Position numbers and translations under genes: made by a program. Shown here one piece after another: positions 3,569 to 50,800 of a stretch of 64,000 nucleotides of DNA. Below the pieces are notes generated by a model, which worked only from the letters and a program-made list of their open reading frames with translations, did no database searches and had not been told where the DNA came from. Source of the stretch: Piromyces finnis finn (taxonomy: Eukaryota; Fungi; Neocallimastigomycota); contig MCFH01000063.1 in the NCBI GenBank assembly GCA_002104945.1, positions 124,001-188,000 on the forward strand, written 5' to 3'. How positions within the stretch are numbered: the stretch's first letter is position 1; each line of letters starts with the position of its first letter.

Positions 3569-4008
3569 TGTAACGAATACTAGAAATAACTAAATTGTCT
3601 TAGTGGTTAGTAGCTAAGACTTTGAGTCTGAATGACACTAGTTCGAGACCTCATAGATACTATTTTAAAAAAATTATAATTTTATTTTATTTTATTTTAT
3701 TTTTAAATTTTATTTTATATGAAGATTATTGATTGGTTAAGAATTTTAAGTTGAAAAAATTTTATAAATTAATTTAAAAAAATTTTTAGTATAAATACGA
3801 GTGAATTTTCCCAAATATTTTAAAGAATCGAGATTTTATTAATAAATAATTATATTATTAAACACTAACTTATTAAGTTAAATTCTATGTGTTTTTAATG
3901 ATATTTTTATAAATTAATAATTTACAGAATATTTTAAAGTGTTAATATTACTAAGTTATTTAGTAAATATTATAATTTGTTTTATTGTTAAAGACACATT
4001 TCTTTACA
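3569..4008 (+). repeat. 3' LTR of element A (440 bp)
   Basis: Starts with TG directly after the PPT and ends with CA at the junction with the element B LTR. TATAAAT at 3790-3796. The first 15 nt (TGTAACGAATACTAG) match the solo LTR at 46776 at 14/15 positions. Confidence 0.8.
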
Positions 4009-4507
4009 ATAATAGAATTTTAATAATAACAATTACATCGATAAAATGATGAAAAATATCTTCTATTTATATTTTTCCTAAATACATTTATATTATATTA
4101 TAACTATTTATTTCTTATATATTATTATTTAAAATCTACACTAAAATCTTAATTATTAATAAATATTTAAACTATAACTATTTTTAGTAAAATACAATTG
4201 GCAATTCAAATTAAGTACTATTCAATTTGAATATGTGCCCATGTATTATTGATATATTAATCATTTATTATTTATTTATTTCTATGAAAAAACAATACTA
4301 AAACTAGGGATTTAAATTGAGAATATTAATTTACTTGTTAAACATTAAAAATAAACTAATAATTTATTTTGTTTTAAACTTTAATTATTAATAAATAAAT
4401 TATGTCTCATTTTCTTTTTCTGAATATAATTTGTGTAACTTAAACAATAATACTTGTGGCTTAAGTTACATTAAAGATATCAAACAGAGGCGTTTGATAT
4501 CTTTACA
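4009..4507 (-). repeat. 3' LTR of element B, interrupted at 4009 by element A
   Basis: Matches 9653-9919 apart from an extra 232 bp. Begins TGTAAAG on the minus strand. The distal part (equivalent to 9548-9652) is missing and replaced by element A. Confidence 0.9.
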
Positions 4508-4543
4508 ATCTCTCTCTCTAAGTCGAGCTCCTGCGAGATTAAT

Positions 4544-9094: not shown

Positions 9095-9374
9095 CTCTAA
9101 ATTTAAACTTTCAAACTCACTAATTAAGGCCTCCAACGTAAACTATTAAATAAAATAAAAAATGTTTTCTTACTACTGTTTCAAGTAAGTAATCTTAATT
9201 TTTTTTTCTTTTTTTTTTTTTTTTTACACTAATACAATCTATTTAAATACAAAAGTTATTCAAACACGTTCTGCAAAGCAGTGTCGAACAAGTTTTGTAT
9301 CTATATATTGATTCCTTCGGTAGAATTCCTTTAACAAGGGCAGCAACAGAGTTTAACCTATAATTGTTTCAGTA

Positions 9375-9496
9375 ATTCTTCTTCTATGGTAGCAACCAAG
9401 TTCTTCTATAAATTCTTCTTCTGTGGTAGCAACCAAGTACTTCGGTAGATTCTTCTTCTATGGTAGCAACCAAGTTCTTCTATAAATTCTTCTTCT
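9375..9496. repeat. 37-bp tandem repeat (about 3.3 units) in the 5' leader of element B
   Basis: ATTCTTCTTCT(A/G)TGGTAGCAACCAAGT core starting at 9375, 9412 and 9449, with a partial unit at 9486. Units 1 and 3 are identical. Confidence 0.9.
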
Positions 9497-9547
9497 GACA
9501 GTAGTAGATATCCTAACGTACTCTTGAAGTAGTTAGGTAATTGTTAT

Positions 9548-9919
9548 TGTAATGGCGACACAGAAAGAATAGATTAGGATATCTATTCTATTACAATAAC
9601 ACTAAATTTAAAATAAAAATAAAAAATTGTTTTATTAAAAATATCTTTTATTATAATAGAATTTTAATAATAACAATTACATCGATAAAATGATGAAAAA
9701 TATCTTCTATTTATATTTTTCCTAAATACATTTATATTATATTATAACTATTTATTTCTTATATATTATTATTTAAAATCTACACTAAAATCTTAATTAT
9801 TAATAAATAAATTATGTCTCATTTTCTTTTTCTGAATATAATTTGTGTAACTTAAACAATAATACTTGTGGCTTAAGTTACATTAAAGATATCAAACAGA
9901 GGCGTTTGATATCTTTACA
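9548..9919 (-). repeat. 5' LTR of element B (372 bp, 232 bp shorter in U3 than the 3' LTR)
   Basis: TGTAAAG...ATTACA termini on the minus strand. TATAAA at 9715-9710. An 11-nt self-complementary PBS follows at 9547-9537. Confidence 0.9.
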
Positions 9920-11707
9920 TTATCAGCTTCCTTTAATATATTGAACTTTTGATTTTTATTAAGCATTTGGATTTCTGTCATATTCCTCTTAGTTATCATT
10001 TTTTTACTATTATTTTCTATATTATTTGGTGTTTCCATAATAGTTTCTTTTTGCTTAAGAGTTTTTGAAGTTTCTTCTATTTTATTAATCTTTGTATTTC
10101 CATCATCTTCATTATTTTCCTCCTTTCTATTAATGTTTCCTTTATTGCCTCCATTATTTTTATTGTTTTCCTCATTTATTTTATTTTCATTAGTTGTGTT
10201 ACTTTTATTATTTTTGTTGTCATTTTCTTCTCTGCTTTCTTCAACATAGCTTATTTCATTTTGGTTATCATTATTGTATAATATTTCGTTACAATTATAT
10301 TCACTTTCTTCTTCTGAGTCGATATCCATTATTCTTCTTCTTCTATCTCTGATTTCTTTCTTCTTTTGCTTTAATATATTAATTTTTGGTTGGTTCAAAA
10401 TGGAAGGTTTTATTATTGATTTATTAGTATTATTTATTTTATTTTTATCTAATAGTTTAATAGATGTGTTTTTATTTTTGTGAAGCACATTTATTGTATT
10501 TAGATTTTGATTTGGACGTGCAATTTTGTTTATATAGGGAGATTGCATACTCCCATCAATTAGTTTAAATAATTTTCTTCATCATAATTCTCAGGACATT
10601 CGAAGTCTTGATGACCAATACGTAAGCAATTTGCACAGAAGTTTATCTTAAGTTCTGACAATTTTTGCGTTAACTCTTGAATTTCGTCGTTGTTGTCAGC
10701 ATTATTTTTAAGTATATTTCTTCTTTCTTCCATTCTGTTATTGAATTGATTTCTATTATAATAATTACTTCTTTGTTCATTATTAATTATCTTATTATTG
10801 TAATTATTATTTAAATTATCATTGTTGTTGTTATTTTGATAATATTTATTATAACCGTTTTTATTGTTAGGATAATCATAATTTGGTACATTATTATAAA
10901 TTCTGTAATTTGGATTATTATTTGGATTATTGAAGTTAGAGACATATCTGTTACTATTATTATAATTTCTATATATGTTGTGATTATTATTGTACATCTT
11001 CTTAATTCTATCATTGTTGTCACTTGTATTTGGTAGTAAATAAGATGTACTAGTTTTATTCTTTGTGTTGTACATAATTTCACTATGATCTGTATTTTCT
11101 TGAAATTTGCTAAACTTATTTAATTTATTGAATTTTTCTTTGTTTGTTCCAGAGGGTATTGCCTTTCCTTTATTTTCTTTCATTAGGTTCATTATCTTCT
11201 CTTTCTTCGAAGTTATCTTCATGGCGTCTTCTAGGGTTGTTGGTTCTTCTTCCATAAGATTTTCATATATTTTTTCCCAGTTCCTGAAAGCATTAATATA
11301 ATAAGACGTTATAATTAATTCTGATAATGTGACGGTTTTATTTATTTGATTTAATAATTCCGTGAATCTTAAATCAAATTCAGAGATACTTTCATCTTTT
11401 TTATTGTAATAGAAGAGAGTTCTAAGATTTTTGAATTCTTGGAGGATGTTTTCTTGTAATGTTTACTGAGATTCTTTAAAATTGTCTCATAGTTATCTGG
11501 ACTGCTTTTGTTTAAGGAATTATATACAATTGTTCTGGCCACATTCGCAGTTATTGCTAGTAAATAATCAATTTTTTCTGCTTCTTCAATGATTTTGAAT
11601 GTAGAACACCAATGGTCAAAGGAGAATTTCCATGAGTCAAAAGATATATTTGATTCGCCTAATATAGGTAATCTATTGAAAGTAATAATTTTTGTCTGGT
11701 TGTCCAT
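9920..11707 (-). pseudogene. Gag (Zn knuckle) and N-terminal Pol of a different LTR-retrotransposon family (element C), interrupted by element B
   Basis: ORFs 11369-11707 and 10560-11255 join into one gag if one A is added to the A6 run at 11397-11402 (IKKDESISEFDLRF...). CANCLRIGHQDFEC is a CX2CX4HX4C knuckle. The downstream ORF is in the -1 frame and runs into the element B LTR. No RT or integrase is visible, so the class is inferred from gag alone. Confidence 0.75.
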
Positions 11708-12425
11708 TTTCTGTACTATTATTATGTTATTTCTTATATATTTTATATTTAAATAATTTCCTATTTTATTAATTATTATTATTTCTTATTTTTGTTTATT
11801 AATTAATTATTGTTGATATTATTGATAATAATTATTGTCTATACTATTATTAAATGATAAATTTTTATTATAATTTATTATTATTATCTTAGAATATGAT
11901 CGTCAAATATTTGTATTTTCAATATTATTACTAATTATTATTAATTATTACTAATTATTAATCATTAATTATTTATTATTTATTATTTATCCTTTTATAT
12001 TTATTATTATTATTATTCAATGTTTAGTAATATAATTATTTGTGATATGTTATTTACTAGTGTTTTAACTATTTTATTTATGATTATATAATTTCAATTT
12101 ATATATATATATATATATTTATATTTTTTATATTTCTATTACTTTAATATATCTTGCATAATATAATTTATTTTATTGTTAATTTTAATTTAATTATCAT
12201 ATCAAGTCACATAACAATTTATATATTTAAAATATTATTTATTATTATTTGTATATTTTATATTTCAATTGCTCGATTGATGTATATAAATCACTTTATG
12301 TAAATGTATTTATATAATTTCATATGTTTTATTATAATTGTTATTAAATATTATTATTCACTATTAATATATATTTTATTCAATAACATATTTTTTTTTT
12401 TTTTTTTTTTTTGTTTTATATATAT

Positions 12426-12547
12426 TGTAATGAGGTATATCTAATGATAAGGGTTAGACTAGAAAATCATTAAGGTTAGATTAATGAAAATTTCATAATT
12501 ATATTTTTATAACCAATCATTAAGTAATTAATTCACTTATCAAATTG

Positions 12548-12578
<31 letters not shown>

Positions 12579-12813
12579 TAATTTTCATGTATAAAAGAGA
12601 GAATAAGAAAGATAAAATAGTTCTTTAGTGTTTTTATTAATAATTAATAAAAATTAGTTTTTTTTTTGTTTCGTCTTTAGTTTGATAATACACTGACCTA
12701 GCGAGTTAGTCGTATTATAATAATAAATTTAATAAATAAACATTATTAAAAAAAAAATACATATATTTGATACATTAGAGTGTGTGTGTTTATTATTATA
12801 ATATTTCGTTACA
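12426..12813 (+). repeat. 5' LTR of element D (388 bp)
   Basis: Direct repeat of 17566-17954; TATAAAA at 12590-12596. Confidence 0.97.
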
Positions 12814-12882
12814 ATAAAAACACTCTAAGAAAAAGATCGCTACCTCAGTGCCTCGTTTATTTGCTTACTTCTAATTTTTTTT

Positions 12883-15800
12883 ATGGATAACTCTGCTGAT
12901 TTGAAGAACGGTTTTGATGGCAACCGTCGCTACCTGAAGGGATTCTTAGCCAAAATGGACATGATCTTTATGATCCATCCTGAAATAGGAAGGGACGATG
13001 GAGAAAAGGTCTTCTACGTCGTTAGTCGCCTCTACGGGGATGCAATGAATTGGGCTGCTACCTTGATTAACAACCATGATCCTTGCTTACAGGATTATGG
13101 CGCCTTTGTTGGAAAGCTGAAGGCTGCTTTTGGTTTTCAGGATATGGTCTATACTGCCAACCAAAAGCTCAAGAAGATCAAACAACATGGCCTATCCAAT
13201 ACTCAAGAGTATATCAAGGAATTTAACTACTATGCTGATGAATCCACTTGGAATGAACAAGCCAAGATGGATGCTTTTGTTGATGGGTTGGACGATAGAA
13301 TCGCCACCCATATCCTTCAGATGTTTCCTGGCCCTTCTACCTTGATAAACTTACAAACAATAGCCAGTCGTATAGGAAGTAGATTGGCATGCCACCAAGA
13401 GGAAATAAACAGAAGATCCAATAGAAGTTTCCGTTCTAAACAAAGCTTCCAATCCCGCTCCTCAGAAAGATCTACAAGTAAATCCACTCAGCCCAAGAAG
13501 GAAAATAATTTTGGCCCCATTTCAAGTGAAGAACGTAGCCGCCGAATGAAAGAGAATCTCTGCTTATATTGTGGTAAACCTGGTCACCGATTATCTGAAT
13601 GCCCTATTAGAACCAAAAAGGAAAACCATACTAATAATGCTGGGGTCCATGTTTTGAATGAACAAGAAAAATCCACTCGACTTTCGGATAACTCCTCTTT
13701 ACCTCAAACTGTTATCGATGTTGATGTTGTTCTTCCATACAAATCTGTCGGAACTAAAGTTCTCTTAGATAGTGGTTCACAATTCTGTTTGATAGACCAC
13801 GCCTTTGTTAAGGCCCATGAGATCCCTATAATTACCAAAGTAAAATGCCCACAAATTATAGGTATCGGAGGTCACCAAAAGATTATCGGCCAGACTTGGC
13901 CTATAACTGTGGAACACATGAATCACTCATGCCAGTTACAATTTTACGTCGTAGAATTGCCTTCTTACTGTTGTATTCTTGGCTCTGATTGGCTGGCCCT
14001 TCACAATCCGACAATCAATTTTGCTAGTAAGGACGTTTCCTATCATTCTGAATACTGTAAGGAAAATTGCTTAAGGAAAGAATCTGCTAGCTCTACCACT
14101 TCTGAACTCGAAGACCAATCGAAGGACGAAATGTCAGTTGGAAATACACCTGAATACCCTTTCAATGTATTCACTTGTTTAGAAGAACCTGAAGTTGAGT
14201 CACCCCAAATTCCAATTCACTACTCTCAACACTCCAAAGTGTTCGAGGAAAGGCTCGCTGATAAACTCCCTCCTCATCGCCCGTACGACTGTGAGATCAA
14301 CCTGAGACCAAATAGCAACTTGTTTTATGGTCCAATCTACCGACTTACTGAGAAAGAATCAAAGGTATTAGAAGAAACCATTAATGAAAATTTAAAAAAG
14401 GGGTTTATCCGCAAATCCAAATCGCCAGCTGGTGCTCCCGTTCTGTTTGTCCCGAAGAAGAGTGGAGAACTTCGTATGTGTATCGACTACCGCCGCTTGA
14501 ACGAAATCACCATTAGGAACTCGTACCCTCTCCCATTGATCCAAGACATGTTGGATCATCTAGGAAAAGCTAAGGTGTTCTCGAAGTTAGATCTTCGATC
14601 CGCCTATAACTTGGTAAGAATCAAAGAAGGCGATGAATATAAGACCGCCTTCACCTGTCAATTTGGCCATTTCGAATATCTGGTAATGCCTTTCGGTCTC
14701 AAGAACGCTCCTGCAGTCTTCCAACATTTTATTAACGACGTTCTTGAAGGCATTATCGGTAAATTCGTCTTTTCGTATATTGACGATATTATCATTTTTT
14801 CTGATAATATAGCCGAACATCATGAACACGTCAATGAAGTCCTTCGTAGACTCGAAGAAGCCGGACTGTACGCTAAACTTGAAAAATGTCTATTCGACTC
14901 TCCTTGTCTTGACTTCCTTGGTCATAGAATCTCTGCCTCTGGTATCGGAATGGACCCTAATAAGGTGAAAGCCATTGCGGAATGGCCGACTCCTAAATCG
15001 GTCCATGAACTACAATCTTTCCTAGGCTTAGCCAACTATTATCGTAGATTTATTCCTGGCTTTGCTAAGATTGCTCACCCACTCCACCAACTTTGCAAGA
15101 AGAACACCGCCTTCGTTTGGAACGATACCGCTCAAGATGCTTTTGATGCTTTGGTTAAGCATTTTATTAGTCAGCCTATCCTTGCATATCCTGATGTTGA
15201 CCTACCTTTCGTTGTCGAAACCGATGCAAGCAGCTTCGCCATAGGTGCTGTATTGTCTCAAGTCAACAAGTCCGACAATATTCTTCACCCTGTTGCGTTC
15301 TTTTCTAGATCCCTTACAAACCCGGAGAAGAACTACCCTATCTATGATAAAGAACTTTTGGCTATCGTCGCGTCCTTAGAAGTGTGGAGACATTTTTTGA
15401 AAGGTGCGAATCATCCTTTCAAAATTATATCAGACCACAGAAACCTCCTTTTTCAGAAGAAACCGGAGAAGATGACTCAGAGATTAATTAGATGGTCCCT
15501 TTTCCTTGCTGAATTCGATTTTGTCATTGAATATCGCCCTGGTTCCTCGAACGGGAAAACCGATGCCTTGTCAAGAAGACCTGACTATCTTGATCACTCT
15601 TGCAATTCCGATTCTAATAACTCTGTCTTTCGTCCCGAAAATTTCAGCTCCTGCTTTGCTTCATCCACTCCTTCTTCTCTTCTTGAAAAAATTGCTCTCT
15701 CTTGTAAACTTGACAAATTCTTCATTGAGACTTCTAATCAACTTCTCAATGATAATTGTTCTTCTGACTACAAACTTAGTAACAACGTCCTCCTTTTCCA

Positions 15801-17077
15801 AGATAAAATCTATGTTCCTAATGATTGCCGAGTTGAAATTCTGTCTTCTTGTCATGACTCCCCTGCTGCCGGCCATTTTGGTATTTCAAAAACTTTATCC
15901 TTGATTTCCCGTAACTACTGGTGGCCCAAAATGTATCAGGATGTTAAGGACTATGTCCGTTCTTGTGAGGTCTGCTGTCGTTCGAAATCCTCTAGACATA
16001 AACCTTACGGGTTATTATCCACTCTTCCTTTAGGTGAACGTCCCTGGTCTTCCATTGCTATGGATTTTATCACTGACCTCCCCTCTTCTCGTGGATTTAC
16101 CTGTATCTTCGTTGTCATTGATCGATTGACAAAAATGGCTCACTTTATCCCTCTTGAAAAAGTTCCCACTGCTGAACGTGCTGCCGAAGCTTTCATTAAC
16201 AACGTCTTCAAACTTCATGGATGCCCCTCCGACATTGTTCTCGACCAAGGTTCTCAGTTCACTTCAAAGTTTTGGAAGAAATTCTTTGCTACCCTCAAGA
16301 TTGATTTGAAATACTCTTCTGCTTATCACCACCAATCCAATGGCCAGACGGAGAGAGTGAACTCCGTTGTAGAACAATATCTACGCTGCTTCTCAAATTA
16401 CAAAGGCACTAACTGGATCGAATACTTAAGCCTAGCTGAATTTAGTTACAATAATTCAGTTCAAGAATCTGCAAAACAAACACCCTTCTTCTTGAACTAT
16501 GGTTTCCATCCTAATTTTAATCCAACAATTCCAACAACAAGTGAAGTTCCAAGAGCTGAAGAATACACAAAAGAATTAAAAGAAATTATCAGCACCCTCA
16601 AGAAAAACCTTTCGGAAGCCCAAAAGAAACAAGAACATTTCGCCAATAGACATAGACAACCAGGCCCGTCATTCAAACCAGGAGAAAAGGTATGGTTAAT
16701 CAATAATAATTTAGTTAAGGGAAATAAAAAATTCACCCCTCGGAAACTCGGTCCCTATGAAATTGAACAACAAATATCAGAAGTCTCATTTAAATTGAAA
16801 CTCCCTGGTAACATGAAGATTGATCCGGTATTCCATAAATCATCTCTCGAGCCTTACTTCGAAGGGAAAAGTACAAACCGAAAAGTTCAACCTCCACCAC
16901 CTGTCATTATAAACGAAGAGGAGGAATACGAAGTAGAAGAAATTCTGGACAAAAGAAGACGCTATAACAAAACTCAGTACTTGATCAAATGGAAAGGATA
17001 TCCTATTTCAGAAGCCTCATGGGAACCCGAAGAAAATCTGAACTGTCCAGCAAAGCTAAGAGAATTCAACAAGACCC

Positions 17078-17082
<5 letters not shown>
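12883..17082 (+). CDS. Gag-Pol polyprotein, 1399 aa (gag-ZnK-PR-RT-RH-IN-chromodomain)
   Basis: [42 protein letters not shown], integrase D-D-E, terminal chromodomain. Confidence 0.98.
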
Positions 17083-19133: not shown

Positions 19134-19205
19134 AGCAGCGTAGCGCAGTGGAAGCGTGGTGGGCTCATAACCCACAGGTCGTATGATCGAAACATACCGC
19201 TGCTA
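19134..19205 (+). tRNA. Initiator tRNA-Met (CAT)
   Basis: Acceptor stem AGCAGCG/CGCTGCT with A1-U72, anticodon arm GTGGG-CTCATAA-CCCAC with three G-C pairs, T-loop ATCGAAA (A54/A60). All are eukaryotic initiator hallmarks. Confidence 0.97.
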
Positions 19206-19829: not shown

Positions 19830-21035
19830 TTAATTCCAAATCTTGGAACAAATATCATTAATTGATTGACATTTTTGGTAATCACTACCTTGGTAACATT
19901 GGTTAAGAGCAGAGTAACAATCATTAGACTTCTTAGTCTTACAATCCCAATCTTGAGAACCACAGCTAAGATAATCAGAAGAGTTAACATTACTGTTGTT
20001 GTTGTTGTTGTTGTTGTTCCAGTTGTTGTTGTTATTGTTGTTGTTATTATTGTTCCAGTTGTTATTGTTGTTGTTGTTGTTATTATTGTTATTCCAATTA
20101 GTTTGTTGGATAGACTTGGTAGTAGTAGTAGTTGGGAGAGTCTTGGAACCGTTGTTGTTGTTGTTGTTGTTGTTCCAGTTAGTTTGTTGAATAGACTTGG
20201 TAGTAGTAGTAGTTGGGAGAGTCTTGGAACCGTTGTTGTTGTTGTTCCAGTTGTTGTTATTGTTGTTGTTGTTGTTCCAGTTAGTTTGTTGAATAGACTT
20301 GGTAGTAGTAGTAGTTGGGAGAGTCTTGGAACCGTTGTTGTTGTTGTTGTTCCAGTTGTTGTTGTTGTTGTTGTTCCAGTTGTTGTTGTTGTTGTTGTTA
20401 TTCCAGTTAGTTTGTTGAATAGACTTGGTAGTGGTAGTAGTTGGGAGAGTCTTGGAACCGTTGTTGTTGTTGTTGTTGTTCCAGTTGTTGTTATTGTTGT
20501 TGTTATTGTTATTCCAGTTAGTTTGTTGGATAGACTTGGTAGTAGTAGTAGTTGGGAGAGTCTTAGAACCGTTGTTGTTGTTGTTGTTGTTGTTCCAGTT
20601 GTTGTTGTTGTTGTTGTTATTGTTATTCCAGTTAGTTTGTTGGATAGACTTAGTAGTAGTAGTAGTTGGGAGAGTCTTGGAACCGTTGTTGTTGTTGTTG
20701 TTGTTCCAGTTGTTGTTGTTGTTGTTGTTGTTATTCCAGTTAGTTTGTTGGATAGACTTGGTAGTAGTAGTAGTTGGGAGAGTCTTGGAACCGTTGTTGT
20801 AATTGTTGTTGTTGTTGTTGTAATTGTTGTAGGTAGTTGGAAGGGACTTTGATGAAGAAGAAGAGTAACCTGGAATAGTTTTTGCTACATTTATATAAAT
20901 ATAATTTTAAAATATTAATAATTTTATAAGTTTATATAATAAATATTTATAAAAAATTATTATTTTTATCTTACATGATTGACCAAAAACAGAAACGAGG
21001 CATAAAGCTAATAATGAAAGATTAATGTACTTCAT
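19830..21035 (-). CDS. Secreted Asn/Thr-rich repeat protein with a C-terminal six-Cys domain (371 aa, two exons)
   Basis: Exon 1 (21035-20975) encodes signal peptide MKYINLSLLALCLVSVFGQS. GTAAG...TAG intron at 20974-20885. Exon 2 (20884-19830) is open throughout, with 7 x GSKTLPTTTTTKSIQQTNW separated by poly-Asn, ending CGSQDWDCKTKKSNDCYSALNQCYQGSDYQKCQSINDICSKIWN*. Confidence 0.9.
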
Positions 21036-39294: not shown

Positions 39295-42200
39295 TTATTT
39301 TATTTTATGTTAAAACCAACATTATTTTTTTTATAAGACAAATATTTCATAAAAATTACTATTATGAGGAAAAATATAAATTTAAAAAGTAATAATAATT
39401 TAATTATTATATTAATAATATTAATACCTATTTTTAATAAAAATAAAATAAATATTTTCTTTCTGTACTTGGGTTAAAATGAATAATATAGTAAAGATAG
39501 TGAAATATATAATTTAACTCATTATAAATAGAAATATTTAAAAGTTTCATATTTATTTATTATGAAATTACAGAAAAAATATTCATCTATCCTATTTTAA
39601 TAATAAATATGATGTGCGACTTTCGTGGCACTTTATAAATTATAACCCTTTATTAAAATTATTAACTACAGATATTGATAAGAATTTTAAAAATTCTTCA
39701 TTAAATAAAAATATAACCTTACAATAAATTTAGAAAATGAATTATCACAATTAAATGAAGAAAATCATGATATTTTATTTAGTGTATTTATTCCTTAATA
39801 AAACATGATATAAAAATTACTAATAATAGGTTATAAAATTGTTACTTTGATTAATGAAAACAAAAAACAATATTCCATTATTTATAAATAATGTATATTG
39901 ACTTTTTTTTTTGCTAAAAATTTATGTTAGAATATATCCAATTTTTTTAACCATTGATTTATAAAAATTATCCATAGAAGTAAAATTTAATTTCTATTTT
40001 TACTTTAGAAATGTCTTTTTTTTTTGTAAATTTAGAAAATAAAATTCATTTTAATAATAATAATAATACTTTATTATAAATTATTAATTTATAAAATAAT
40101 AATAATTATACATATTCTTTAATAACATAATCATAATTAAAATTATAATATATATTTTTTGTCCTGTTTCTCATGTTTTTTTTTCTCATATAAAAAAAAA
40201 GCAATAATTGATTTGTTTATTGAAATATCTCTATTTATATCAAGTAAATAAAAATACTATATTTGTTTATTTATATTAAACTCGTTTACAGTTCAAATTA
40301 TTTAAAAAAAACATTAATTTATAGAATATTTTATATCTATTTAATGTCCACATTATTGGTCATAAAATATCTCTGTAATGTAACTATATAAGGAACATAA
40401 ATATCGAATAAAAATAATAATTATAAAATTTTATAAATATTAATATTGATATTACAATAATAACAAATATAAATAATAATAATATTATTATTATTATTAC
40501 TATTAATACTACTATTACTAATAGTAATAATTAAAATTAAAAATATAACATATATAATATAAAAAATAGATTCATCAATGCAATTCAAAAATTTTTTTGA
40601 TAAATATAGAAAAAATAATTTTTTATCAATATTTAAATCTAATATAGATAAGAGATTAAGAGAGCTTGATTACCCTAGTGATGTGGATTGTCAACGTTGG
40701 GTCTGGGAATTAATACAAAATGCAAAGGATAGTATTGTTGGTCAAAAAGATAGAGATGGTGTAGATATTGAAATATTAGTACAATGTAATGTTGAAGTTT
40801 CTGCAAATGAAATAGGAATTTCGGATAATGATACAAATTCTAAATTAGTTGTGGATAAATACACATTTAAACATAATGGTGCACCTTTCATTGATAAAAC
40901 ATTATATGCTGTAATATATAAATTTAGTGAAGGTAAAAGTGATAATTCGGAAAGTACAGGTCGTTTTGGTACAGGATTTCTTACAACTCATTCTCTTTCA
41001 AAAATTGTAAACATTTCAGGTGATATCATTTCTGATAGTGGTAAATTAGAAGGATTTTCTATTACCATGTATAGAGAAGGTGAAAATAAAGAACTTTTAG
41101 AAGGATTAGATAAAACCGAGAAAAGTTTTCGTATATTAGATAAACCTATTGGATGGACAAGTTATGAATATTTAGCCAGAAACGAAAGAAACAAAGAAGC
41201 TGGTAGATTAGGAATTAAAAATTTTAAAGAAAATATTCCCAAAGTAATGTTATTCTGTCCTGAAATTCGTAGCATTAAACTTGATGATAATGGTACTATT
41301 CTAACAATTAAGCGTGGAACACCTTATAAAGATGAAGATGGTATATGTGAAAGATTACCACTTGATATTTATGATGGTAGTAATCACTTCGTTAAAACAT
41401 TTTTATATGTTAATTTTAATGAATATAGTAAAGAATTAAGTGATAGATTTAATTCCACCCGCAATCTTAAAATATGTTGTGCTATTGAATTAGACAATAA
41501 TAATATTTTTGTAAATACATCATCTCCATGTCTTTTTTCTTCTCTTCCATTTGTAGGATCTGAAAAGCATGAATTACCATTTATTATTAATAGTCCAGAT
41601 TTTGAACCTGACTCTGAAAGACAATCAATTATTCTTGAAGGAAGTGAAATTGCTAAAATTGGAAAAATATCTAATGCTGGGATTAACAAAATGATTCTTA
41701 AAAAAGCAGTTACAATGTTTACAAATATTTTAGATTGTATATGCAAAAATGACGATATAAAAGATCGTTATTTATTAGCTAGAGGTCTTAAATATATTTT
41801 AAATAATGATGAAATTGAGAAATTTGATCATGATTGGTATGAAAATGAATTTGTTAAACCAATGAGAAATATATTACTTAAATATCCTATTGTATGGAAT
41901 GGTGAAATATTTATTAAATTAACTGATATATATCTTCCATTAGTTAAATATTATAGAAATAAAGTTACTCAAAAACAAGCATATGAATTTATTTCTCAAA
42001 TATACAAAAGTAATGTTCCAACACTTGAAGAATCATTAAAATTTGAAGAATATATTTGGAAAAATGATAACAATATTAATTATATAATAATAAAAGAGTG
42101 TACTCAAGAATTATCAAGTTATAATAATGTGAATAATCTTGGTACTATTACTAAAGATATTTGGAAATTTATGAATGATTTTATTGCTTTTATTAATATA

Positions 42201-45200
42201 TATCATTCTTCCTATCTTCGTGATTACAGTATTATCCCTAATATGAATTGTGATTTTGTTAAATTGACGGATGAAATTACTACATCGAAATATGTTCCTG
42301 AAAATATAATTGAGTGTATTGAAAAGTTAGGAATTCGATGGAAAATAAATCATATTCATAAAAATATTGAAAATTATAGTCCTGGTATTGATCATAACAT
42401 TGAATATGCTGTCTCCGTAATTAAAAATAATATTAAAGAATGGTCGAATAATGTTTTAACCTTAATTTCATATATTCCTAATGATAGTGAAGATAAACTA
42501 TTTATTGAAAAACGACAAATAATTTATGAATTGTGTTCAAGAATATGGAAAGATTCGATTCCTAATAAAAATAATGGTGATTCATTCCCAAAAGAATTAT
42601 GGAATGGAATTGATGATATTGTATTTGATAAATTAATTAAAGAAATTGAAGATGCTAAAGAAATTGGAGGTGTTTATACTATTGAATTTATGAAAATGTT
42701 TTTAAAATGTATTTCACAATATTATCCAAATTTTAGAAATCATTCTATTATTCCTAATCAAAATGGAGAATTCCGAAAAATCCATGAATTATATGAAGAT
42801 GTTAATATTCCATCGTTATTTAAACAATGTATGAAAGAATGTTTTAATTACGATATCAAAAATGAATTAATTGATGATAATTTAATATCAATTGAAACTT
42901 TAATTAATGGAGGAGAAAAGTCAATTTTTAATTATATTGATAAATTAAATGCTTATTTTTCACAAAAATGTATTTCTGAAGAAATGAAAGAAATGAAAAC
43001 AAAAGCAGCCAGATATTTAATAAGAATCATTCCTAAAAACAATGAATCTATTATTGAAGATGAAAGTAACAATAATTGGCAATATAATCAAAGAAAATTA
43101 TTTGAAATATATAATACATTTAGTAAAAGAAATGATGAAAGTATTGAAATTGATGGTAATGAAAGAAACAAAGAATTATGGTATAATGTAAATAAATATA
43201 TTTACGAGGAAACTAGAAATGTTATTGAAAAATATGAAAATATAGAATCATTAATAAATAAATTAAATGTTGATAAATCAAAATATTTTGAATATTTAAA
43301 TATTATTTTTAATATTTTCAGTGAAAGTAATATTTATGGAAAAGTTATTCCAAATCAATATGAAATACTTTGTAATATAAGAACGCTTAATAACGAAGGA
43401 ATAAAAAATACAGAAACAAATGATATTGCATTAATACCAGAAACATTAAAAGATATTGCTAAAAAACTTGATTATGATATAAGAAAATATCTTATTCATC
43501 CAAAAATTATAAGAATTAACTGGATTGACAATGTTTCTGAAAAAGATGTTAATGAAGAAATTTCAAAAATTATCGAAAAAAATAATAATGACCCAAAAAA
43601 AGTTCTAATTCTAAATATATCGAGACATTAAATAATTTAAATGAATATAATTTCAAAATGATTAGAAAAAATACTTTTGATGATAAAATGATGGATATTT
43701 TCGGAAATGTTTATGTTGCTAATATTAATAATAGATTAAGAGAATTAGAAAATCCTACAAAAGAAGATTGTCAACGTTGGATATGGGAATTAATCCAAAA
43801 TGCTAAAGATAGTATTGCTGATGATAAAGATAGAAATGAAGTTGATATTGAAATATTTGTTCAAGATAATAAATATGTATTTAAACATAATGGTTCACCA
43901 TTTACAAATAAAACACTTCCAGCTTTACTTTATAAATACAGTAAAGGCAAAGGATATAGTTCAGAAAGTACAGGTCGTTTTGGTACCGGATTTCTCACAA
44001 CACATTCACTTTCCAAGGTTGTTAATATATCAGGTGAAATTGATTCGGATGGACAATTAAAGAGATTTATCGTTACATTATATAGAGAAGGAGACGAAAA
44101 AGAACTTTTAGAAGGATTAAATAAAACCAAAAATAGCTATAAAGAATATGCAATTGATTCAATTGATTCACATCAATGGACATGTTATGAATATTTAGCC
44201 AAAACACAAAGAAATAAAGAAGCAGGAGAATTAGGTATTAAAAATTTCAAAGATAATATAACTAAAGTAATGTTATTCTGTCCTGAAATCAATAGTGTTA
44301 AACTTAATGATAATGGCAAAATATTTGAAGTTAATAGAGAATATAATATCGATGATGTCAATACAAATGAATGCAATACATTAACCATTAGTGTTAATGA
44401 TGATGGAAATAATTACAAGAAAAATTCATATATATTAATAAAAAAGAAATCAATAAAGAATTAAGTGATAGATTTGATACCGAACGTTATCTCAGGATAT
44501 GTTGTGCTATTGAACTAGATAATGACAATAACATATTTATTGATCGTTCATCTCCATGTTTATTCTGTTCACTTCCACTTGTAGGATCAGAAAAACATGA
44601 ATTACCATTTATCATTAATAGTCCGGATTTTGAACCTGACTCTGAAAGACAATCCATTCTTCTTGATGGAGATGAAATTGATGAGAAAACAAAAAAAATA
44701 TCTAATCCAGGAATTAACAAAATGATTCTTCGAATTTCACAAAATCTTTATGAAAAAATTATAAAATTTATTAGTCAAGATTGTAATATTAAGAAACGTT
44801 ATTTATTAGCTAGAGGTCTTAAATATATCCTAAACAATGATGTCATTAAATATTTTGATCATGATTGGTATGAAAATGAATTTGTTAAACCAATGAGAAA
44901 TATATTACTTAAATATCCTATTGTATGGAATGGTAAAATATTTATTAAATTAACTGATATATATCTTCCATTAGTTAAATATTACGAAGATAAAGTTACT
45001 CAAAAACAAGCATATGAGTTTATCTCTCAAATATACAAAAGTAATGTTCCAACACTTGAAGAATCATTAAAATTTGAAGAATATATTTGGGAGAATGATA
45101 ATAATACTAATTATATAACAATGAAAGAGTGTACTCAAGAATTATCAAGTTATAATAATATAGAAAATCTTGATAAAATTATTGAAAATCCATGGAATTG

Positions 45201-46163
45201 GATCAATGAATTTATAAAATTTATTAATGATTTCCATTATAAATTCCTTGAAAAATACAGCATTATTCCTAATATGAACTGTGATTTTGTTAAATTAACA
45301 AATGTTCTTACATCATCAAAATCTGTACCAGATAATATGATTGAATGCCTCAATAAACTCGGAGATTCATGGAAAGAAAACCACATACACAAAAATATAA
45401 ATAAATTTGATTATGGTAATAAACATGATATTTCTGATGCAGTATCTAAAATTAATAAAAATCTAGAATTAAAACCAGATTTCAAAAATTATTTAATTGT
45501 AATATCATATGTTCCTAATGATAATGAAGATAAAATATTTATTGAAAAACGACAAATAATTTATGAATTGTGTTCAAGAATATGGAAAGATTCGATTCCT
45601 AATAAAAATAATGGTGATTCATTCCCAAAAGAATTATGGAATGGAATTGATGATATTGTATTTGATAAATTAATTAAAGAAACTGAAGATGCTAAAGAAA
45701 TTGGAGGTGTTTATACTATTGAATTTATGGAAATGTTTTTAAAATGTATTTCACAATATTATCCAAATTTTATAAATCATTCTATTATCCCTAATAAAAA
45801 TGGAAAATTCCGTAAGATCAATGAATTATTTAAAGACGAAATTAATCCTATATTTAAAGTATGTATGTATGAATGTTTCCAAATAGATTTAAATGATGAA
45901 TTAATTGATGATAAATTAGTACCAATAGAAGCATTAATTAAGGATAGAAATAAGACCACATCAAGCTATATTCGTAAATTAAATGAATGTTTTGAATCAG
46001 AGGAAATATCCCATGCAAATAAAGAGAAAGCAGCAAAATATTTAATTAGATTTATTCCAAAAATTATAAATACTATTTTCGATATAGAATGGATAAATGA
46101 TCAAAGAACACTTTTGTCCATATATAATATATTTACTAAAAGTAAAATAGAATTTATTGAAAT

Positions 46164-46167
<4 letters not shown>

Positions 46168-46197
<30 letters not shown>

Positions 46198-46715
46198 TTC
46201 CGAGTGCATTTCTCCCATCGATCAGAGTTAGCTCCAATGGTGGTTCTTAGAGAAACGTTGGCTCATTCCTATTGCCCTCCTGGTCTGTCATACTGTTTCT
46301 TCAGCTTCGACGCTCACTTAATCCATGTACATTAGATGCATGTCGTTGTACGATATTTCACAACTACAATGCTAAGCCTCTTATAGTCAATTTGATCACG
46401 TGTCAACCGCCCCCTAATGTTTACACTTAAATTGATTAAGGAATATTATGTGTTTTTGGCATAGCCTAAGTCACCACTTATTAAGTTCTAATTTGGAATG
46501 TACCATGTACACTAGACCCTCTCAGGCCGGCTAGACGAGTGTTATTATCATAGTAGTAAATTAGAAAGTTCATTTATACTTACCTGAATATCATAACCCA
46601 ACCCATGGCAAACCCAGTGGGAAAATCAACAGGCACTGACATCTGCGGGGTCGAACCAGAAGCCTTATGTATGCTAAGGAAACGCCTTAACAACCAGGAT
46701 AAAAACTGGAACGAC
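46168..46715 (-). mobile_element. tRNA-derived SINE (548 bp) with poly(A) tail
   Basis: Poly-T at the left end on +. 13-bp TSD TATTGAAATTGAT (46155-46167 and 46716-46728). B box GGTTCGACCCC (46657-46647) and D-arm-like TGGTT(GTT)AAGGCG on the minus strand. Confidence 0.88.
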
Positions 46716-46775
46716 TATTGAAATTGATGGAAATAAAGAATTTTGGTATTATGTAAATAAATATATTTTTGATGA

Positions 46776-47806
46776 TGTCACGAATACTAGTGAAATTACA
46801 ATTTCAAGATCACTTGGAATTGTGAAATCACTTATGAAAATTCAAAATCAACAAATATTTTATTTTCAAATAAATTATAAAATTTTATTAAGAAATATTT
46901 AAAAATTTAGAAAAGGTTAAAATATGACCTTAACCCTTAATAATTTTTATAATAAATAACTTTAACCCTTATCGTTAAAATGGAATAAGAAAAAACACGC
47001 GTATCTCCTCAACGAATGACGATTTTTGAATAAAAATATTTTGGTTATAATTACGTTCGTTAGAAAGCCACGCTCGAGACAAACAACATATCTTAAAATC
47101 AGGTCAATATCTCTGCTGGTTCACGAGATATTCCAATTTAAAGATATTTTGTTAGCAATGATTAATTGTTTATTCAGAGAATGATCACCCCTGATATATC
47201 AAATATAAATCATTCACTCAAAGTATAAAAATTATTGTTTAATTAAATTAAAATTATTTTCCGGAACTAATTAACTTTATTTTATAATAATTATTTCAAT
47301 AACATATCTTATAATCTTTGAATTAAAAGATTATAATTATTAATATTATATTCAATGAATTATATTATAATTAAGAAATAATTAATATTATAAATATATA
47401 AACAATAGTTATTTTTAATAATTAGTAGTAAGTCTTAAGTTTAGCCTTAGTATTATAAAATATATTATGAATATAATCATGTACTAAAAAGTTATTTTAG
47501 TATTAAATGTAAAATTACAAATAGTATAAATAGTTTAGAATAGTTTTATGAATTAAATCTTTGTAAAGATTATTATCTTATTAATACTTAATAAGTATTA
47601 CTATTAAATAATCTTATTATTATATATATTCTTTAAATAAAATAAAAAGGAATTATTTTAACTATAATACATAATATAATTATTCATTTATAAATCAATT
47701 AAGATTATTTTAATAAAACATTTTTTTTTCTAACCTAGTTATCTTTTAACCTTTTATTTAATTTGATATTTTAATATTAAATTATAAGTTTAGTAAAACT
47801 TTTACA
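46776..47806 (+). mobile_element. Solo LTR (1031 bp)
   Basis: TGTCACG...TTTACA termini with a 5-bp TSD GATGA (46771-46775 and 47807-47811). Excision restores the reading frame (YIFD-EIKII). Strand inferred from similarity to the start of the element A LTR. Confidence 0.88.
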
Positions 47807-50800
47807 GATGAAATAAAAATTATTATTGAAAATTATAATAATATTGAATCATTAGCTATAGATTTTGAACTTGAAAAGAAAGACCTTTTTAAATACCTGA
47901 ATATTATTTTTAGTATCTCTACAGAAGGAAAAATAATCCCAAATCAAAATGAAGAATTTTGTGAAAATGAACATCTTTATAATGAAGGTTTAAATGAAGA
48001 TTCCATGCCAAGAGAATTAAAAGATATATTAAAAGATTTAGATCATGATATAAGAGATTATCTCATTCATGAAGATATTAATATAAAATCTTATCTAATA
48101 AGAGGTTATAAAGGATATAAATATATATGTGACAGTATTGATGAAATAATGGTAAAAAAATATGATGAATACATGGATGAAAAAAATAAGGATTCAGGAA
48201 AGCAGCCTAATTTTAATTTTGTTAGAGCTGCCAGTAATTTGATTGAATTATATTTTGATAAATTAATAAAAAATCAGAAAAATCCTCAAAAATTATTTCC
48301 ACTAGTATTTTCAAAAAAAGATAGTATCTTATTAAATGTTATAGTTAATAAGGAAACTAGAACAAGTATTATAGAATTAAGAGAAAAATGTAATGAAAGT
48401 CAATTATTGTCAAAGCTTTCAAAAAATGAAAATATATGCAAAATGATTATTAGTGGAGAACTTAGTGATGACATTGATTTAATTAAATATATTAAAATGT
48501 TTAACAAAACTGAAGGTGATAATAATGAACAAATTATTCAAAAACTTTCAAAAAATGAAAATATTTGCAAATGGATCATGAATGAAAATCTTGAAGATAA
48601 CAGTGATTTAATTAAACTTTTTGAAGTTCTTATAACTTGTGATAAATTTACTATTAAAAAAATTATTGAAAATGCAGAATATTTAGATATGTTTACATAT
48701 GGAAAATTAAATATAAATAATTATATGTCTTTCAAAATGAATAAGACAAAAATAGTTAGTACATCCATAGAAGGAAGTATTACACAGTTTACTAAATCAT
48801 CTGAAAAATATGATGAGGAAACTATTAATAAAATATTAAATAATCCAAACATTATCGACATGATAAGAAGTAATGAATTAAATGATAGTATTCTTAAAGA
48901 TTATAAATATTATCACGATTTATTTACAACAAATGAAAAAACCGGATATAGTGGTGAAGCATATATTTATGAATTATTAATGAATCTTTTAAGATTAGGT
49001 CAACTCAAGTCAGTTGAATGGAAAACATTAAGTAAAAATGGATGCGGAACTAAATTAGATTATCATGGAAAAACATATTATCTAAGTCCAGATGGTGCTC
49101 ATTATGATATTGTTGTTGAAACTAATAATGGTCGAAAAATATATATTGAAGTTAAATCAACTAAGCACAGTTACAATGAAAATAAAGTTCCATTTTTCCT
49201 CAGTCAAAAACAAATAGACATGATGAATGATATTAAATATCCAAATGAATATATTTTAGCAATAGTTTTTGATGTATTTTGTAATCCTAAGCATTTCTTT
49301 ATGAGTTTAAGAAACAATGTTGTAGAAAATAAAATTTGCAATGATGAAAACCATAAATATATGATAAAGATGGAAAATGAATATGAAGATGATTATTTAA
49401 CAAAAATTTTTCAATAATTAAAAAGTAATAATGAAATGAAAAAGGTAAAAAGAATGAAGATGAATATCACTTTTTAAATAATATTATTCTACCTTTTATA
49501 TAAAAATTAATATAATTTTTATAATTTTTTAAAACATATAATTTCTTTATATATAATAGTATTAATATATTTCTTAATTTTGATGATAAAATAATAAAAT
49601 AAATATAATAATAAAAAAAATAATAAATGTTAAAATATTTTTTATTTTGGGTGTTTATAATTAAATAATACATTAAATATAATCCATTATACTCTTATTA
49701 ACAAAGAATATAAAAGAACATAAAATATTTTTAATTTTAATTCTTTGTTAAATTAAACTATATCAAATAATTTAAATTACTAATATAAAAAAAAGCTAAA
49801 AATAAATATTGATTTCTTCTTTTTAATTTTGAGTGGTATCAAATCAAAATATGTTTTAATGGCAGCAAACATTTTAAAATCTTTATAATTATTTTAATTA
49901 AAAGTTTAGCATAAGAATTACGATCTCCTTTGGTTGCGCTGGCCCTACTGTTTCTTTAACATTGATGTTCTTAGTTGATTACTTTAAACCTTTTGAGCAT
50001 TAACTATTACTGGCCAATGATAAAAGTTATTATTATGAATAAAAGTTTCTCAGTGACTATCATAATTTGCATTATGTATATTTTCTAAATTTAAGAATGT
50101 AATTAGCTAAGTTAAGAAAAGATACACTTTAAAATTTCCTATTTGTTGATTTAATCTGAACTAAAGTATAAGATTTTTCTTGCTTTAGGTTTCTTTATGT
50201 TTTAGGTTGAATCACTATTGTTGAGCATTTTTTGATACTAAAATCTATTTTATTATTAAATAACCAAATCATTAACTCTATTTATCAATATTTTTTATAA
50301 AGAGATTAAAAAGAATTGTAGAAAGTGGAAAGCTAACTTTAACGTACTCCTTTCTAAATATCAAAAGGAGCACTGCCTATTTCATTTGAAATTAACCTAA
50401 GATATTAAATATATGTTTTTGATAAATTATAAACATTTACCAAGAATGCCTAAATAATCTTATTTATAGAGAATATTACAAACAAGCATTAAATCATATG
50501 CTTTTCTAAGATTTAAAAAGACTAAATATATTTCTTTATTATCTAATTGATGTCTATAACATTGGATTGAAATGAAAAGACTGGTATTTTCTTCCTTTTA
50601 TGCGAAAACCAAATTATGAACAAATTATAAAAAAAGAGCAAATAATGAACAAATTAAAGAAAAATATGGTATTTACTACTTTTATAAAAGTAATGAAAAT
50701 CAATTTAATTCTGAAATATAATAATAATATTATTATTATTGCGGAACCGTTTTAATTATAAATATCAAATAATTAAAAATTTTAATAATAGTATAATTCT

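What the first reader, a model, noticed from the sequence alone, without database searches (positions are those of the whole stretch)
40578..49417. Hidden 2,414-aa intronless tandem-GHKL-ATPase/nuclease gene with a Tiamat/NO VEIN-like architecture
Seen: four ORFs plus gaps rebuild into one frame once two TSD-flanked insertions are removed and two A-run frameshifts are corrected. The product has two ~1,000-aa repeats, each starting with a sacsin-type GHKL module, and a terminal D..EVK nuclease (GEAYIYE / YDI / IEVKST / FFLS). Known: HATPase_c plus NOV_C(DUF3883) is the domain content associated with the bacterial single-gene anti-phage system Tiamat and with plant NO VEIN; sacsin has tandem ATPase repeats but no such nuclease. 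Inference: no introns over 7 kb in an intron-rich region suggests a horizontally acquired or recently mobile gene, possibly an ATP-gated anti-virus or anti-transposon nuclease in a fungus. The doubled ATPase repeat fused to the nuclease looks unusual.
Basis: partly seen in the sequence, partly recalled or inferred. Interest (0 to 1): 0.75.

Follow-up and report, generated by a model that had tools for sequence, protein, structure and literature searches.

The report
Broken two-unit Tiamat defence gene
This stretch of the gut fungus Piromyces finnis holds a bacterial-type "Tiamat" ATPase-nuclease gene with its ATPase half duplicated in one reading frame; two jumping elements and two small frame slips have recently broken it, and intact doubled versions in other gut fungi show the layout is real.

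Summary
Window 40578-49417 (+) reads as one ~2,414-codon frame once a SINE-like retroposon (12-bp TSD), a solo Ty3/gypsy LTR (5-bp TSD) and two A-run frame changes are discounted.

The product is [sacsin-type GHKL ATPase + helical core] x2 followed by one NOV_C PD-(D/E)xK nuclease. The pieces hit the PADLOC Tiamat model TmtA (E 1.9e-104, 3.4e-55, 3e-33), NCBIfam NF047352 (both ATPase modules) and Pfam NOV_C.

The genome is Piromyces finnis. It also holds two intact single-unit paralogs of 1,294 and 1,295 aa. The doubling is not a local accident. Multi-unit proteins with the same linker occur in Piromyces sp. E2, Orpinomyces and metagenomes, and an unrelated 2,200-aa group doubled independently. 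The frame-2 text between ORF1 and ORF2 matches those linkers, so this was one gene. It is now a pseudogene.

Tiamat in anaerobic fungi, with Bacteroidota as nearest kin, was already reported in an October 2026 preprint (Yuan et al.). What is new is the double-core architecture and its concerted evolution. In passing, close relatives sit on telomere-capped rumen-ciliate nanochromosomes nested among the fungal genes.

The scan had already noted another Tiamat homolog elsewhere in this genome (s1-176539).

The parts
40578..43601 (+). Unit 1: sacsin/Hsp90-type GHKL ATPase (about aa 1-260) plus transducer and helical core. It is an intact 1,008-codon stretch in frame 0; the mechanical ORF runs on to a stop at 43629-43631.
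   Evidence: PADLOC TmtA E 1.9e-104. NF047352 55.6 bits. AlphaFold model pLDDT 84.6 with Hsp90, TRAP1 and GRP94 as top Foldseek hits, E 7e-8. Family-invariant motifs are kept.
43595..43601 (+). A7 run where the reading frame changes from 0 to 2 (break 1).
   Evidence: Three-frame translation: frame 0 ends in DPKK and then reaches a stop after 9 unrelated codons; frame 2 continues into linker-like text.
43601..43657 (+). Inter-unit linker, readable only in frame 2.
   Evidence: Its translation aligns with the linker of continuous multi-unit proteins P0010, P0003, P0002 and P0005. The Met of ORF2 sits where those proteins have K or E, so it is not a conserved start.
43658..44440 (+). Unit 2 GHKL ATPase module (ORF2, frame 2).
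   Evidence: PADLOC TmtA E 3.4e-55. NF047352 68.3 bits. Pfam HATPase_c_3 is below threshold. All ATPase motifs are kept.
44441..44446 (+). A6 run where the frame changes from 2 to 1 (break 2).
   Evidence: the paralog alignment switches from frame 2 to frame 1 at 44416-44422.
44446..46167 (+). Unit 2 core (frame 1), 574 codons without a stop.
   Evidence: PADLOC TmtA E 3e-33. 78% DNA identity to unit 1.
41856..42095 (+). Gene-conversion tract 1 (unit 1 aa 427-506; its partner in unit 2 is about 44870-45109).
   Evidence: 93-96% nucleotide identity and 88-97% third-position identity, against 62-78% elsewhere.
42456..42737 (+). Gene-conversion tract 2 (unit 1 aa 627-720; its partner in unit 2 is about 45470-45751).
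   Evidence: 94-98% nucleotide identity and 95-100% third-position identity.
46168..46716 (-). SINE-like non-autonomous retroposon inserted antisense. Its poly-A tail reads as poly-T at 46168-46194. The 12-bp TSD lies at 46156-46167 and 46717-46728.
   Evidence: At least 871 candidate copies in the genome; all 40 scored copies are full length at about 97% identity. It is absent from unit 1. No Rfam tRNA match at E<=1.
46729..46775 (+). Short coding remnant of unit 2 between the two insertions (frame 1).
   Evidence: Aligns to unit 1 at 43142-43203; translation.
46776..47806 (+). Solo LTR of a Ty3/gypsy retrotransposon, with TG..CA ends and a 5-bp TSD (GATGA) at 46771-46775 and 47807-47811.
   Evidence: At least 397 candidate copies at 96-100% identity, many in same-strand pairs 5.6-6.6 kb apart. 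Between one such pair (L104) lie gag and RT/RNase H/integrase genes.
47807..48928 (+). End of the unit 2 core and a helical spacer (frame 2).
   Evidence: tblastn to paralog aa 849-1101. The model is helical with low to medium confidence.
48929..49417 (+). NOV_C (DUF3883) PD-(D/E)xK nuclease domain and stop codon. The E, D and E-x-K residues are in GEAYIYE, YDI and IEVK.
   Evidence: Pfam PF13020 E 5.5e-12, 46 bits against a cutoff of 22.1. Model pLDDT 85-95 over aa 310-435. VIA Z 9.7 to the SPARDA DREN nuclease and Z 8.4 to Hjc; all top rows are PD-(D/E)xK enzymes.

Best explanation
The locus is a recently inactivated member of a double-core subfamily of the Tiamat (TmtA) / NO VEIN-type ATPase-nuclease family in the anaerobic gut fungus Piromyces finnis. 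As built, one chain carried two complete Hsp90/sacsin-type GHKL ATPase + helical-core modules in tandem and then a single C-terminal PD-(D/E)xK (NOV_C) nuclease. By homology to Bacillus cereus Tiamat, an ATPase that cuts single-stranded DNA and nicks duplex DNA and protects against phage, the intact protein most likely was an ATP-driven clamp whose helical cores sense a foreign or aberrant molecule and whose nuclease then cuts DNA. The second ATPase-core module plausibly supplied, within one chain, the partner that single-unit Tiamats get by dimerising; this step is inferred. The family reached gut fungi from bacteria, with Bacteroidota as nearest kin (shown at the level of nearest relatives). 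The unit was duplicated in-frame in a fungal ancestor, and the two units have since been partly homogenised by gene conversion (shown). In P. finnis this copy was then broken by two frame changes in A-runs and by very young insertions of a SINE-like retroposon and a Ty3/gypsy solo LTR (shown). The nuclease can no longer be made from this locus. Only the 1,017-aa unit 1 ORF, which lacks a nuclease, remains open.
For: Family: PADLOC TmtA PDLC03967 E 1.9e-104, 3.4e-55 and 3e-33 on the pieces, and 4.2e-121 and 2.5e-118 on the intact paralogs. NF047352 is above cutoff in both ATPase modules. NOV_C is above the gathering score. Hsp90-like fold for unit 1 and PD-(D/E)xK fold for the tail. Both ATPase modules keep every family-invariant motif. 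One gene, not two: the frame-2 linker is homologous to linkers of continuous multi-unit proteins. The multi-unit layout recurs in P0004 (Piromyces sp. E2, 2,265 aa, two NF047352 stretches plus NOV_C), P0003 (a 2,176-aa metagenome ORF; cluster members of 2,168-2,176 aa seen on 18 contigs in all), P0010, P0002, P0005 and P0006. These form their own subclade together with the window units. Concerted evolution: the units of one protein cluster together (100/100) and there are two near-identical tracts. Past constraint: dN/dS 0.37-0.62 between the units. Breakage: TSDs, absence of both inserts from unit 1, and copy numbers and identities of the two repeat families. The frame changes are probably real: 69 A/T runs of 6 or more in nine open reading stretches (about 30 kb) of this assembly are all in frame. 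Origin: the best non-eukaryotic hits are Bacteroidota at about 31% identity over nearly the full length, in agreement with Yuan et al. 10.64898/2026.09.30.754977. Biochemistry of the prototype comes from the same preprint.
Against: No expression or activity data exist for any fungal member. The match to the TmtA profile covers only positions 6-626 of 1,063. The two A-run frame changes could be homopolymer errors of the assembly, although the two insertions would still break the gene. Continuity of those ORFs therefore rests on database protein records, and some of these are eukaryotic gene models (P0002, P0004, P0005, P0006). dN/dS of 0.4-0.6 shows only moderate constraint. The intramolecular pseudo-dimer idea is untested.
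Confidence: 0.85

Rival explanations
1. There are two separate tandem genes, not one. An upstream ATPase-plus-core gene without a nuclease (ORF1, a 'Type II-A' Tiamat-like protein) is followed by a complete single-unit Tiamat gene that starts at the ATG of ORF2 and is now broken.
For: ORF1 ends in a stop and ORF2 begins with ATG at exactly the position that corresponds to ORF1's own start. Nuclease-less Tiamat-like proteins exist (Yuan et al.). Single-unit genes of about 1,295 aa are the commonest form in the family.
Against: The 57 bases before the ORF2 ATG have no stop in frame 2, and their translation aligns with the linkers of continuous multi-unit proteins. The 9 codons that end ORF1 in frame 0 match nothing in those proteins. 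The ORF2 Met is K or E in the homologs. The window units fall inside the multi-unit subclade.
Confidence: 0.08
2. The gene still works. The A-run frame changes are assembly errors and the two insertions are removed from the mRNA as introns.
For: Homopolymer indels are a known error type of long-read assemblies (my own knowledge that this assembly is long-read; not checked here). The SINE insert plus one TSD copy is 561 bases, a multiple of three. An earlier scan note (s1-186098) says this SINE family carries a 5' splice-site-like motif.
Against: Neither insertion has GT..AG at boundaries that would restore the frame (inspection of the sequence). The only GT..AG pair at the LTR edges gives a stop straight after the junction. 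The SINE is antisense to the gene here. All 69 other A/T runs checked in open reading stretches are in frame.
Confidence: 0.05
3. The region is bacterial contamination or a very recent transfer, not a resident fungal gene family.
For: The gene has no introns and its nearest non-eukaryotic relatives are bacterial.
Against: GC is 22%, like the rest of the window. The gene lies on a contig with Ty3/chromovirus elements and is itself interrupted by fungal high-copy retroelements. Paralogs sit on three other contigs of the assembly. Orthologs occur in five other gut-fungal species across four genera. Identity to bacteria is only about 31%.
Confidence: 0.01

Closest known systems
Tiamat (TmtA), the single-protein bacterial anti-phage system (Millman et al. 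2022; biochemistry in Yuan et al., bioRxiv 10.64898/2026.09.30.754977)
   Same: Hsp90/sacsin-type GHKL ATPase, helical (DUF3684/TPR-like) core and a C-terminal NOV_C/DUF3883 PD-(D/E)xK nuclease in that order. The match to a PADLOC TmtA profile is strong. The catalytic motifs of both enzymes are kept. The preprint already lists anaerobic-fungal homologs (Neocallimastix californiae) with Mangrovibacterium as the nearest bacterium.
   Different: Here the ATPase+core module occurs twice in one chain before the single nuclease, an architecture not among the preprint's Types I-XI. The host is a eukaryote. This copy is broken. Only profile positions 6-626 of 1,063 align.
Sacsin and the plant sacsin-like protein AT5G23110 (three tandem 'sacsin repeat' supradomains)
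   Same: Tandem repeats of the same ATPase + helical-repeat supradomain in one polypeptide. NF047352, the sacsin N-terminal ATP-binding model, matches each module.
   Different: Sacsin ends in J and HEPN domains, and AT5G23110 ends in a zinc finger. Neither has a NOV_C nuclease. The repeat number here is two (three in one Orpinomyces model). The fungal repeats arose by a separate, much younger duplication inside the bacterial-type Tiamat clade.
NO VEIN (NOV) of plants and animals
   Same: The ATPase, helical repeats, beta-sheet fold and NOV_C nuclease core are shared with Tiamat.
   Different: NOV has a long eukaryote-specific N-terminal region, and LOTUS domains in animals. The fungal proteins start directly at the ATPase. 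No plant or animal NOV appears among the best 120 relatives. The NOV preprint also reports that fungal homologs carry only the Tiamat-like core.
Single-unit paralogs in the same genome (BCR36DRAFT_581012 = P0001; BCR36DRAFT_579284 = P0026)
   Same: Same family and same domain order, with no introns; 45-49% identical to unit 1.
   Different: They have one ATPase-core module (1,294 and 1,295 aa), are intact, and belong to other subclades of the fungal clade.

Membership tests
Tiamat (TmtA) family | N-terminal Hsp90/sacsin-type GHKL (GHL) ATPase with motifs I-III | tested here: met
   NF047352 at 55.6 bits (unit 1) and 68.3 bits (unit 2) against a cutoff of 50. Foldseek top hits are Hsp90, TRAP1 and GRP94, E 7e-8. 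The E-x3-N-x2-D, H-N-G-x-P-F and G-R-F-G-T-G-F blocks are kept in both units.
Tiamat (TmtA) family | Match to a curated Tiamat profile across the ATPase and central core | tested here: met
   PADLOC PDLC03967: E 1.9e-104 (ORF1, profile 6-617), 3.4e-55 (ORF2) and 3e-33 (ORF3 piece, profile 344-588). The profile's C-terminal 40% is not matched.
Tiamat (TmtA) family | C-terminal NOV_C/DUF3883 PD-(D/E)xK nuclease with E, D and E-x-K | tested here: met
   PF13020 at 46 bits against a gathering score of 22.1. VIA Z 9.7, rmsd 3.1 over 105 residues to the SPARDA DREN nuclease, and Z 8.4 to Hjc. Residues E318, D368, E382 and K384 of ORF4 are invariant or nearly so in the family alignment.
Tiamat (TmtA) family | One ATPase-core module per chain (canonical single-protein architecture) | tested here: not met
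   There are two modules in this locus, in P0004 and in P0049. This is the respect in which the locus is a variant.
Tiamat (TmtA) family | ATPase and ssDNase activity; protection against viruses | not testable with these tools
   Shown only for the B. cereus protein (Yuan et al.). No fungal member has been assayed.
Functional gene (as opposed to pseudogene) | Uninterrupted reading frame from start to nuclease | tested here: not met
   There are two frame changes and two retroelement insertions.
Sacsin | C-terminal DnaJ and HEPN domains after the repeats | tested here: not met
   Pfam finds only NOV_C in the tail and no DnaJ or HEPN.
NO VEIN (plant/animal NOV) | Eukaryote-specific N-terminal region ahead of the ATPase | tested here: not met
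   ORF1 and the paralogs begin about 40 residues before ATPase motif I. No upstream exon is needed to match the family N-terminus.

The most novel reading that the evidence does not exclude
Gut fungi maintain a distinct double-core Tiamat subfamily in which two full ATPase-sensor modules feed one nuclease. This gives a built-in ATPase pair, a young and independent re-run of the route that produced sacsin, and gene conversion keeps the two units similar. The whole bacterial-type Tiamat clade has also been passed between rumen eukaryotes: close homologs lie on telomere-capped rumen-ciliate nanochromosomes nested among the fungal genes. That would make Tiamat a shared, horizontally circulating immune gene of the rumen eukaryome.
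Probability: 0.45. Interest if true: 0.65.

Novelty: new variant of a known kind. Interest (0 to 1): 0.5.

Why it matters
Tiamat has just been shown to be an ATPase and single-strand DNase with homologs across eukaryotes, but how its ATPase clamp and helical core control the nuclease is unknown. A natural variant with two ATPase-core modules and one nuclease in one chain, found in several gut fungi and independently in another lineage, is a ready-made tool for asking whether the ATPase pair can work within one chain. It also lets one ask whether the two cores sense different things. It shows how a sacsin-like multi-repeat protein can arise from a single-unit ancestor, with gene conversion caught in the act. 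The locus itself illustrates the birth-and-death turnover typical of immune gene families: here a putative anti-invader nuclease was disabled by retroelements. The side observation of fungus-ciliate sharing adds a defence-type gene to the known traffic of carbohydrate enzymes among rumen microbes.

Tried and rejected
- Sequence searches of the PDB with ORF1, ORF4 and a 33-sequence family profile found nothing at E<=1. Fold comparison was needed instead.
- The search for related loci with P0049 in genome contigs and with P0003 in metagenome contigs confirmed no relative.
- The follow-up scans with alignments returned only single-unit loci. No doubled form was found among the 80 best bacterial loci or the 80 best metagenome loci.
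- The organism behind the independently doubled group P0048-P0051 stays unknown. Plasmids gave only distant single-unit hits and phages gave none; cluster look-up gave no names.
- The SINE-like insert has no Rfam match, tRNA included, at E<=1. I therefore do not call it tRNA-derived.
- A mixture-model tree of all 124 units did not finish. FastTree and LG+G4 IQ-TREE were used instead.
- I looked for a GT..AG reading of the two insertions as introns and found none that keeps the frame.
- I did not establish that the neighbourhood is intron-rich. The flanking ORFs gave no Pfam hits.
- The read-through of the broken gene was never sent to a tool. Pieces were searched apart, and in scripts unit 2 was joined only with X at each break for the trees.
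- The large representative-protein search was not used, as the family scans had already settled the identity.


Full report
**What is in the sequence**

The window is G000:C193:124001-188000 of a 56.5-Mb, 232-contig assembly. GC is 16-24% over most of it. Three Ty3/chromovirus elements fill the first 17 kb. One paralog of the gene studied here is 100% identical to a Piromyces finnis protein record, so the genome is that anaerobic gut fungus.

In 40578-49417 the + strand holds four long ORFs. tblastn with an intact paralog covers paralog residues 6-980 once (40590-43517, frame 0). It covers residues 6-1293 a second time, in pieces in frames 2, 1 and 2. DNA comparison shows that the two copies are 78% identical. 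Two blocks, 46168-46716 and 46776-47806, are present only in the second copy.

The first block starts with a long T run and is flanked by a 12-bp direct repeat. The second has TG..CA ends and a 5-bp direct repeat. The other two breaks are frame changes inside an A7 run (43595-43601) and an A6 run (44441-44446). Summing the in-frame pieces gives about 2,414 codons.

**What the insertions are**

The 549-base block has at least 871 candidate copies in the genome. All 40 scored copies are full length at about 97% identity. It has a poly-A tail on the minus strand and a long target-site duplication, so it is a SINE-like retroposon. Rfam finds nothing in it at E<=1, so I do not endorse 'tRNA-derived'.

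The 1,031-base block has at least 397 candidate copies at 96-100% identity, many of them in same-strand pairs 5.6-6.6 kb apart. Between one such pair lie gag and RT/RNase H/integrase genes. The block is therefore a solo LTR of a Ty3/gypsy element. Both insertions are young.

**What the gene is**

- The three N-terminal pieces hit the PADLOC Tiamat profile PDLC03967 with E 1.9e-104, 3.4e-55 and 3e-33.
- Both ATPase modules pass the NCBIfam sacsin-type ATP-binding model.
- The tail passes Pfam NOV_C.
- An AlphaFold model of unit 1 (pLDDT 84.6) has Hsp90-family chaperones as its best structural matches.
- The modelled tail has a confident alpha/beta domain at residues 309-442. It aligns to PD-(D/E)xK nucleases: Z 9.7 to the SPARDA DREN domain and Z 8.4 to Hjc.
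- Both ATPase modules keep all family-invariant motifs. The nuclease keeps its E, D and E-x-K residues.

**One gene or two?**

ORF1 ends in a stop and ORF2 starts with ATG, which could suggest tandem genes. However, the 57 bases ahead of that ATG are open in frame 2. Their translation aligns with the inter-unit linker of proteins that carry two or three units in one chain: P0004 (Piromyces sp. E2, 2,265 aa), P0003 (a 2,176-aa metagenome ORF; cluster members seen on 18 contigs in all), P0010, P0002, P0005 and P0006.

The ORF2 methionine is lysine or glutamate in those proteins. The window units fall in the same subclade as these multi-unit proteins.

Their continuity therefore rests on protein records.

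**History of the doubling**

In trees of the units, the two units of one protein group together: window 100/100, P0003 100/99. A sliding comparison of the window's units shows two tracts with 93-98% identity, third positions included. Identity elsewhere is 62-78%. This mosaic is the mark of gene conversion, so concerted evolution after one old duplication is the simplest reading. Repeated duplication is not excluded.

dN/dS between the units is 0.37-0.62, so both were under some constraint for most of their history.

A separate group of about 2,200-aa proteins of unknown origin (P0048-P0051) is also doubled. There the first units and the second units form separate clades, which points to an older, independent doubling. 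None of the 80 best bacterial loci is doubled.

**State of the gene**

The nuclease cannot be made from this locus. The two A-run frame changes might be assembly errors. However, 69 other A/T runs of six or more, in nine open reading stretches of the same assembly, are all in frame, so they are probably real. The insertions break the gene in any case.

P. finnis also has two intact single-unit genes (1,294 and 1,295 aa) and degenerate fragments on two contigs. This is a birth-and-death pattern.

**Origin**

The best non-eukaryotic relatives are Bacteroidota (Mangrovibacterium, Chryseobacterium, Prevotella; about 31% identity over almost the full length). No plant or animal NOV or sacsin is among the best 120 hits. 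This agrees with Yuan et al. (bioRxiv 10.64898/2026.09.30.754977), who already name Neocallimastix californiae and Mangrovibacterium marinum. It also agrees with the NO VEIN preprint (10.64898/2026.09.30.755639), which finds that fungal homologs carry only the Tiamat-like core. Tiamat in gut fungi and its likely bacterial source are therefore known.

**Mechanism**

B. cereus Tiamat hydrolyses ATP, cuts single-stranded DNA at preferred sites and nicks duplex DNA. It is predicted to dimerise through both its ATPase and its nuclease. By homology the fungal proteins should act likewise.

For the double-core form I infer that the two ATPase modules can pair within one chain and that the two diverging cores may widen what is sensed. 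Neither point is tested. Neither preprint, nor the other papers found, describes two ATPase-core modules ahead of a NOV_C nuclease. Sacsin and a plant relative have three such modules but different tails.

**Seen in passing**

The closest metagenome relatives (45-51% identical) lie on 4-4.7-kb contigs capped by (CCCCAAT)n. This is the telomere of rumen-ciliate macronuclear chromosomes (Li et al., bioRxiv 10.1101/2022.01.05.474053).

In a careful tree, one ciliate clade is sister (100/100) to a Piromyces sp. E2/Orpinomyces pair inside the fungal clade. Fungal monophyly is rejected (p-AU 0.0018), with the caveat that the group was named after the tree was seen. A second, more distant ciliate group encodes proteins of 1,786-1,946 aa. 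The Tiamat preprint does not mention ciliates.

**Verdict**

This copy is a pseudogene, and the general finding of Tiamat in anaerobic fungi is already published. The double-core architecture and its concerted evolution make it a new variant of a known kind.

In the tools the pieces were searched apart. In scripts, unit 2 was joined only with X at each break for the trees.

Noticed in passing
L106, L108, L109 (telomere repeats at both ends); L107, L110, L115 (one end): Metagenome contigs of 4-4.7 kb each carry a complete single-unit Tiamat gene 45-51% identical to ORF1 and are capped by (CCCCAAT)n, the rumen-ciliate macronuclear telomere. In trees these ciliate genes sit among the gut-fungal genes: 100/100 with a Piromyces sp. 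E2/Orpinomyces pair, and fungal monophyly is rejected at p-AU 0.0018. This implies gene exchange between gut fungi and rumen ciliates.
   Followed up: partly
L118, L121, L122, L125, L126, L133: A second group of telomere-capped, very AT-rich contigs (GC 18-23%) encodes longer relatives. Five ORFs are 1,786-1,946 aa and the L126 ORF is 1,161 aa; identity is 33-38%. They branch outside the fungal clade, next to two proteins of unknown origin (P0086, P0096).
   Followed up: partly
P0048-P0051 (no locus available): Four proteins of about 2,200 aa from Logan/ENA assemblies have two ATPase-core units plus NOV_C. Their first and second units form separate clades, which indicates an older and independent doubling. 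Their organism is unknown, and no close relative was found in species-representative bacterial genomes, plasmids or phages.
   Followed up: partly
P0002 (Orpinomyces gene model, 2,123 aa): This model holds at least three units. The middle unit has degenerate ATPase motifs (motifs I-III altered), so unit number varies and some units may be catalytically dead or pseudogenic.
   Followed up: no
window 46168-46716: This SINE-like retroposon family has at least 871 candidate copies at about 97% identity.
   Followed up: partly
window 81-17082: Three Ty3/gypsy chromovirus-type elements (RT, RNase H, integrase, chromodomain) lie on both strands, at higher GC (30-41%) than the rest of the window.
   Followed up: no
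window 19866-20852 and 19134-19205: A 328-aa ORF lies in a stretch with strong GC skew (+0.42). It gives an odd Pfam DUF6538 hit with no stretch that passes on its own, which suggests a low-complexity repeat. It lies about 660 bases downstream of the window's only tRNA gene (tRNA-Met).
   Followed up: no
G000:C211:55508-59158 and G000:C24:436140-437590 (L005, L007-L009, L011): Degenerate fragments of further Tiamat-family copies (40-58% identity, with stops, on both strands) lie in the genome. One lies immediately upstream of the intact paralog on contig C211.
   Followed up: no
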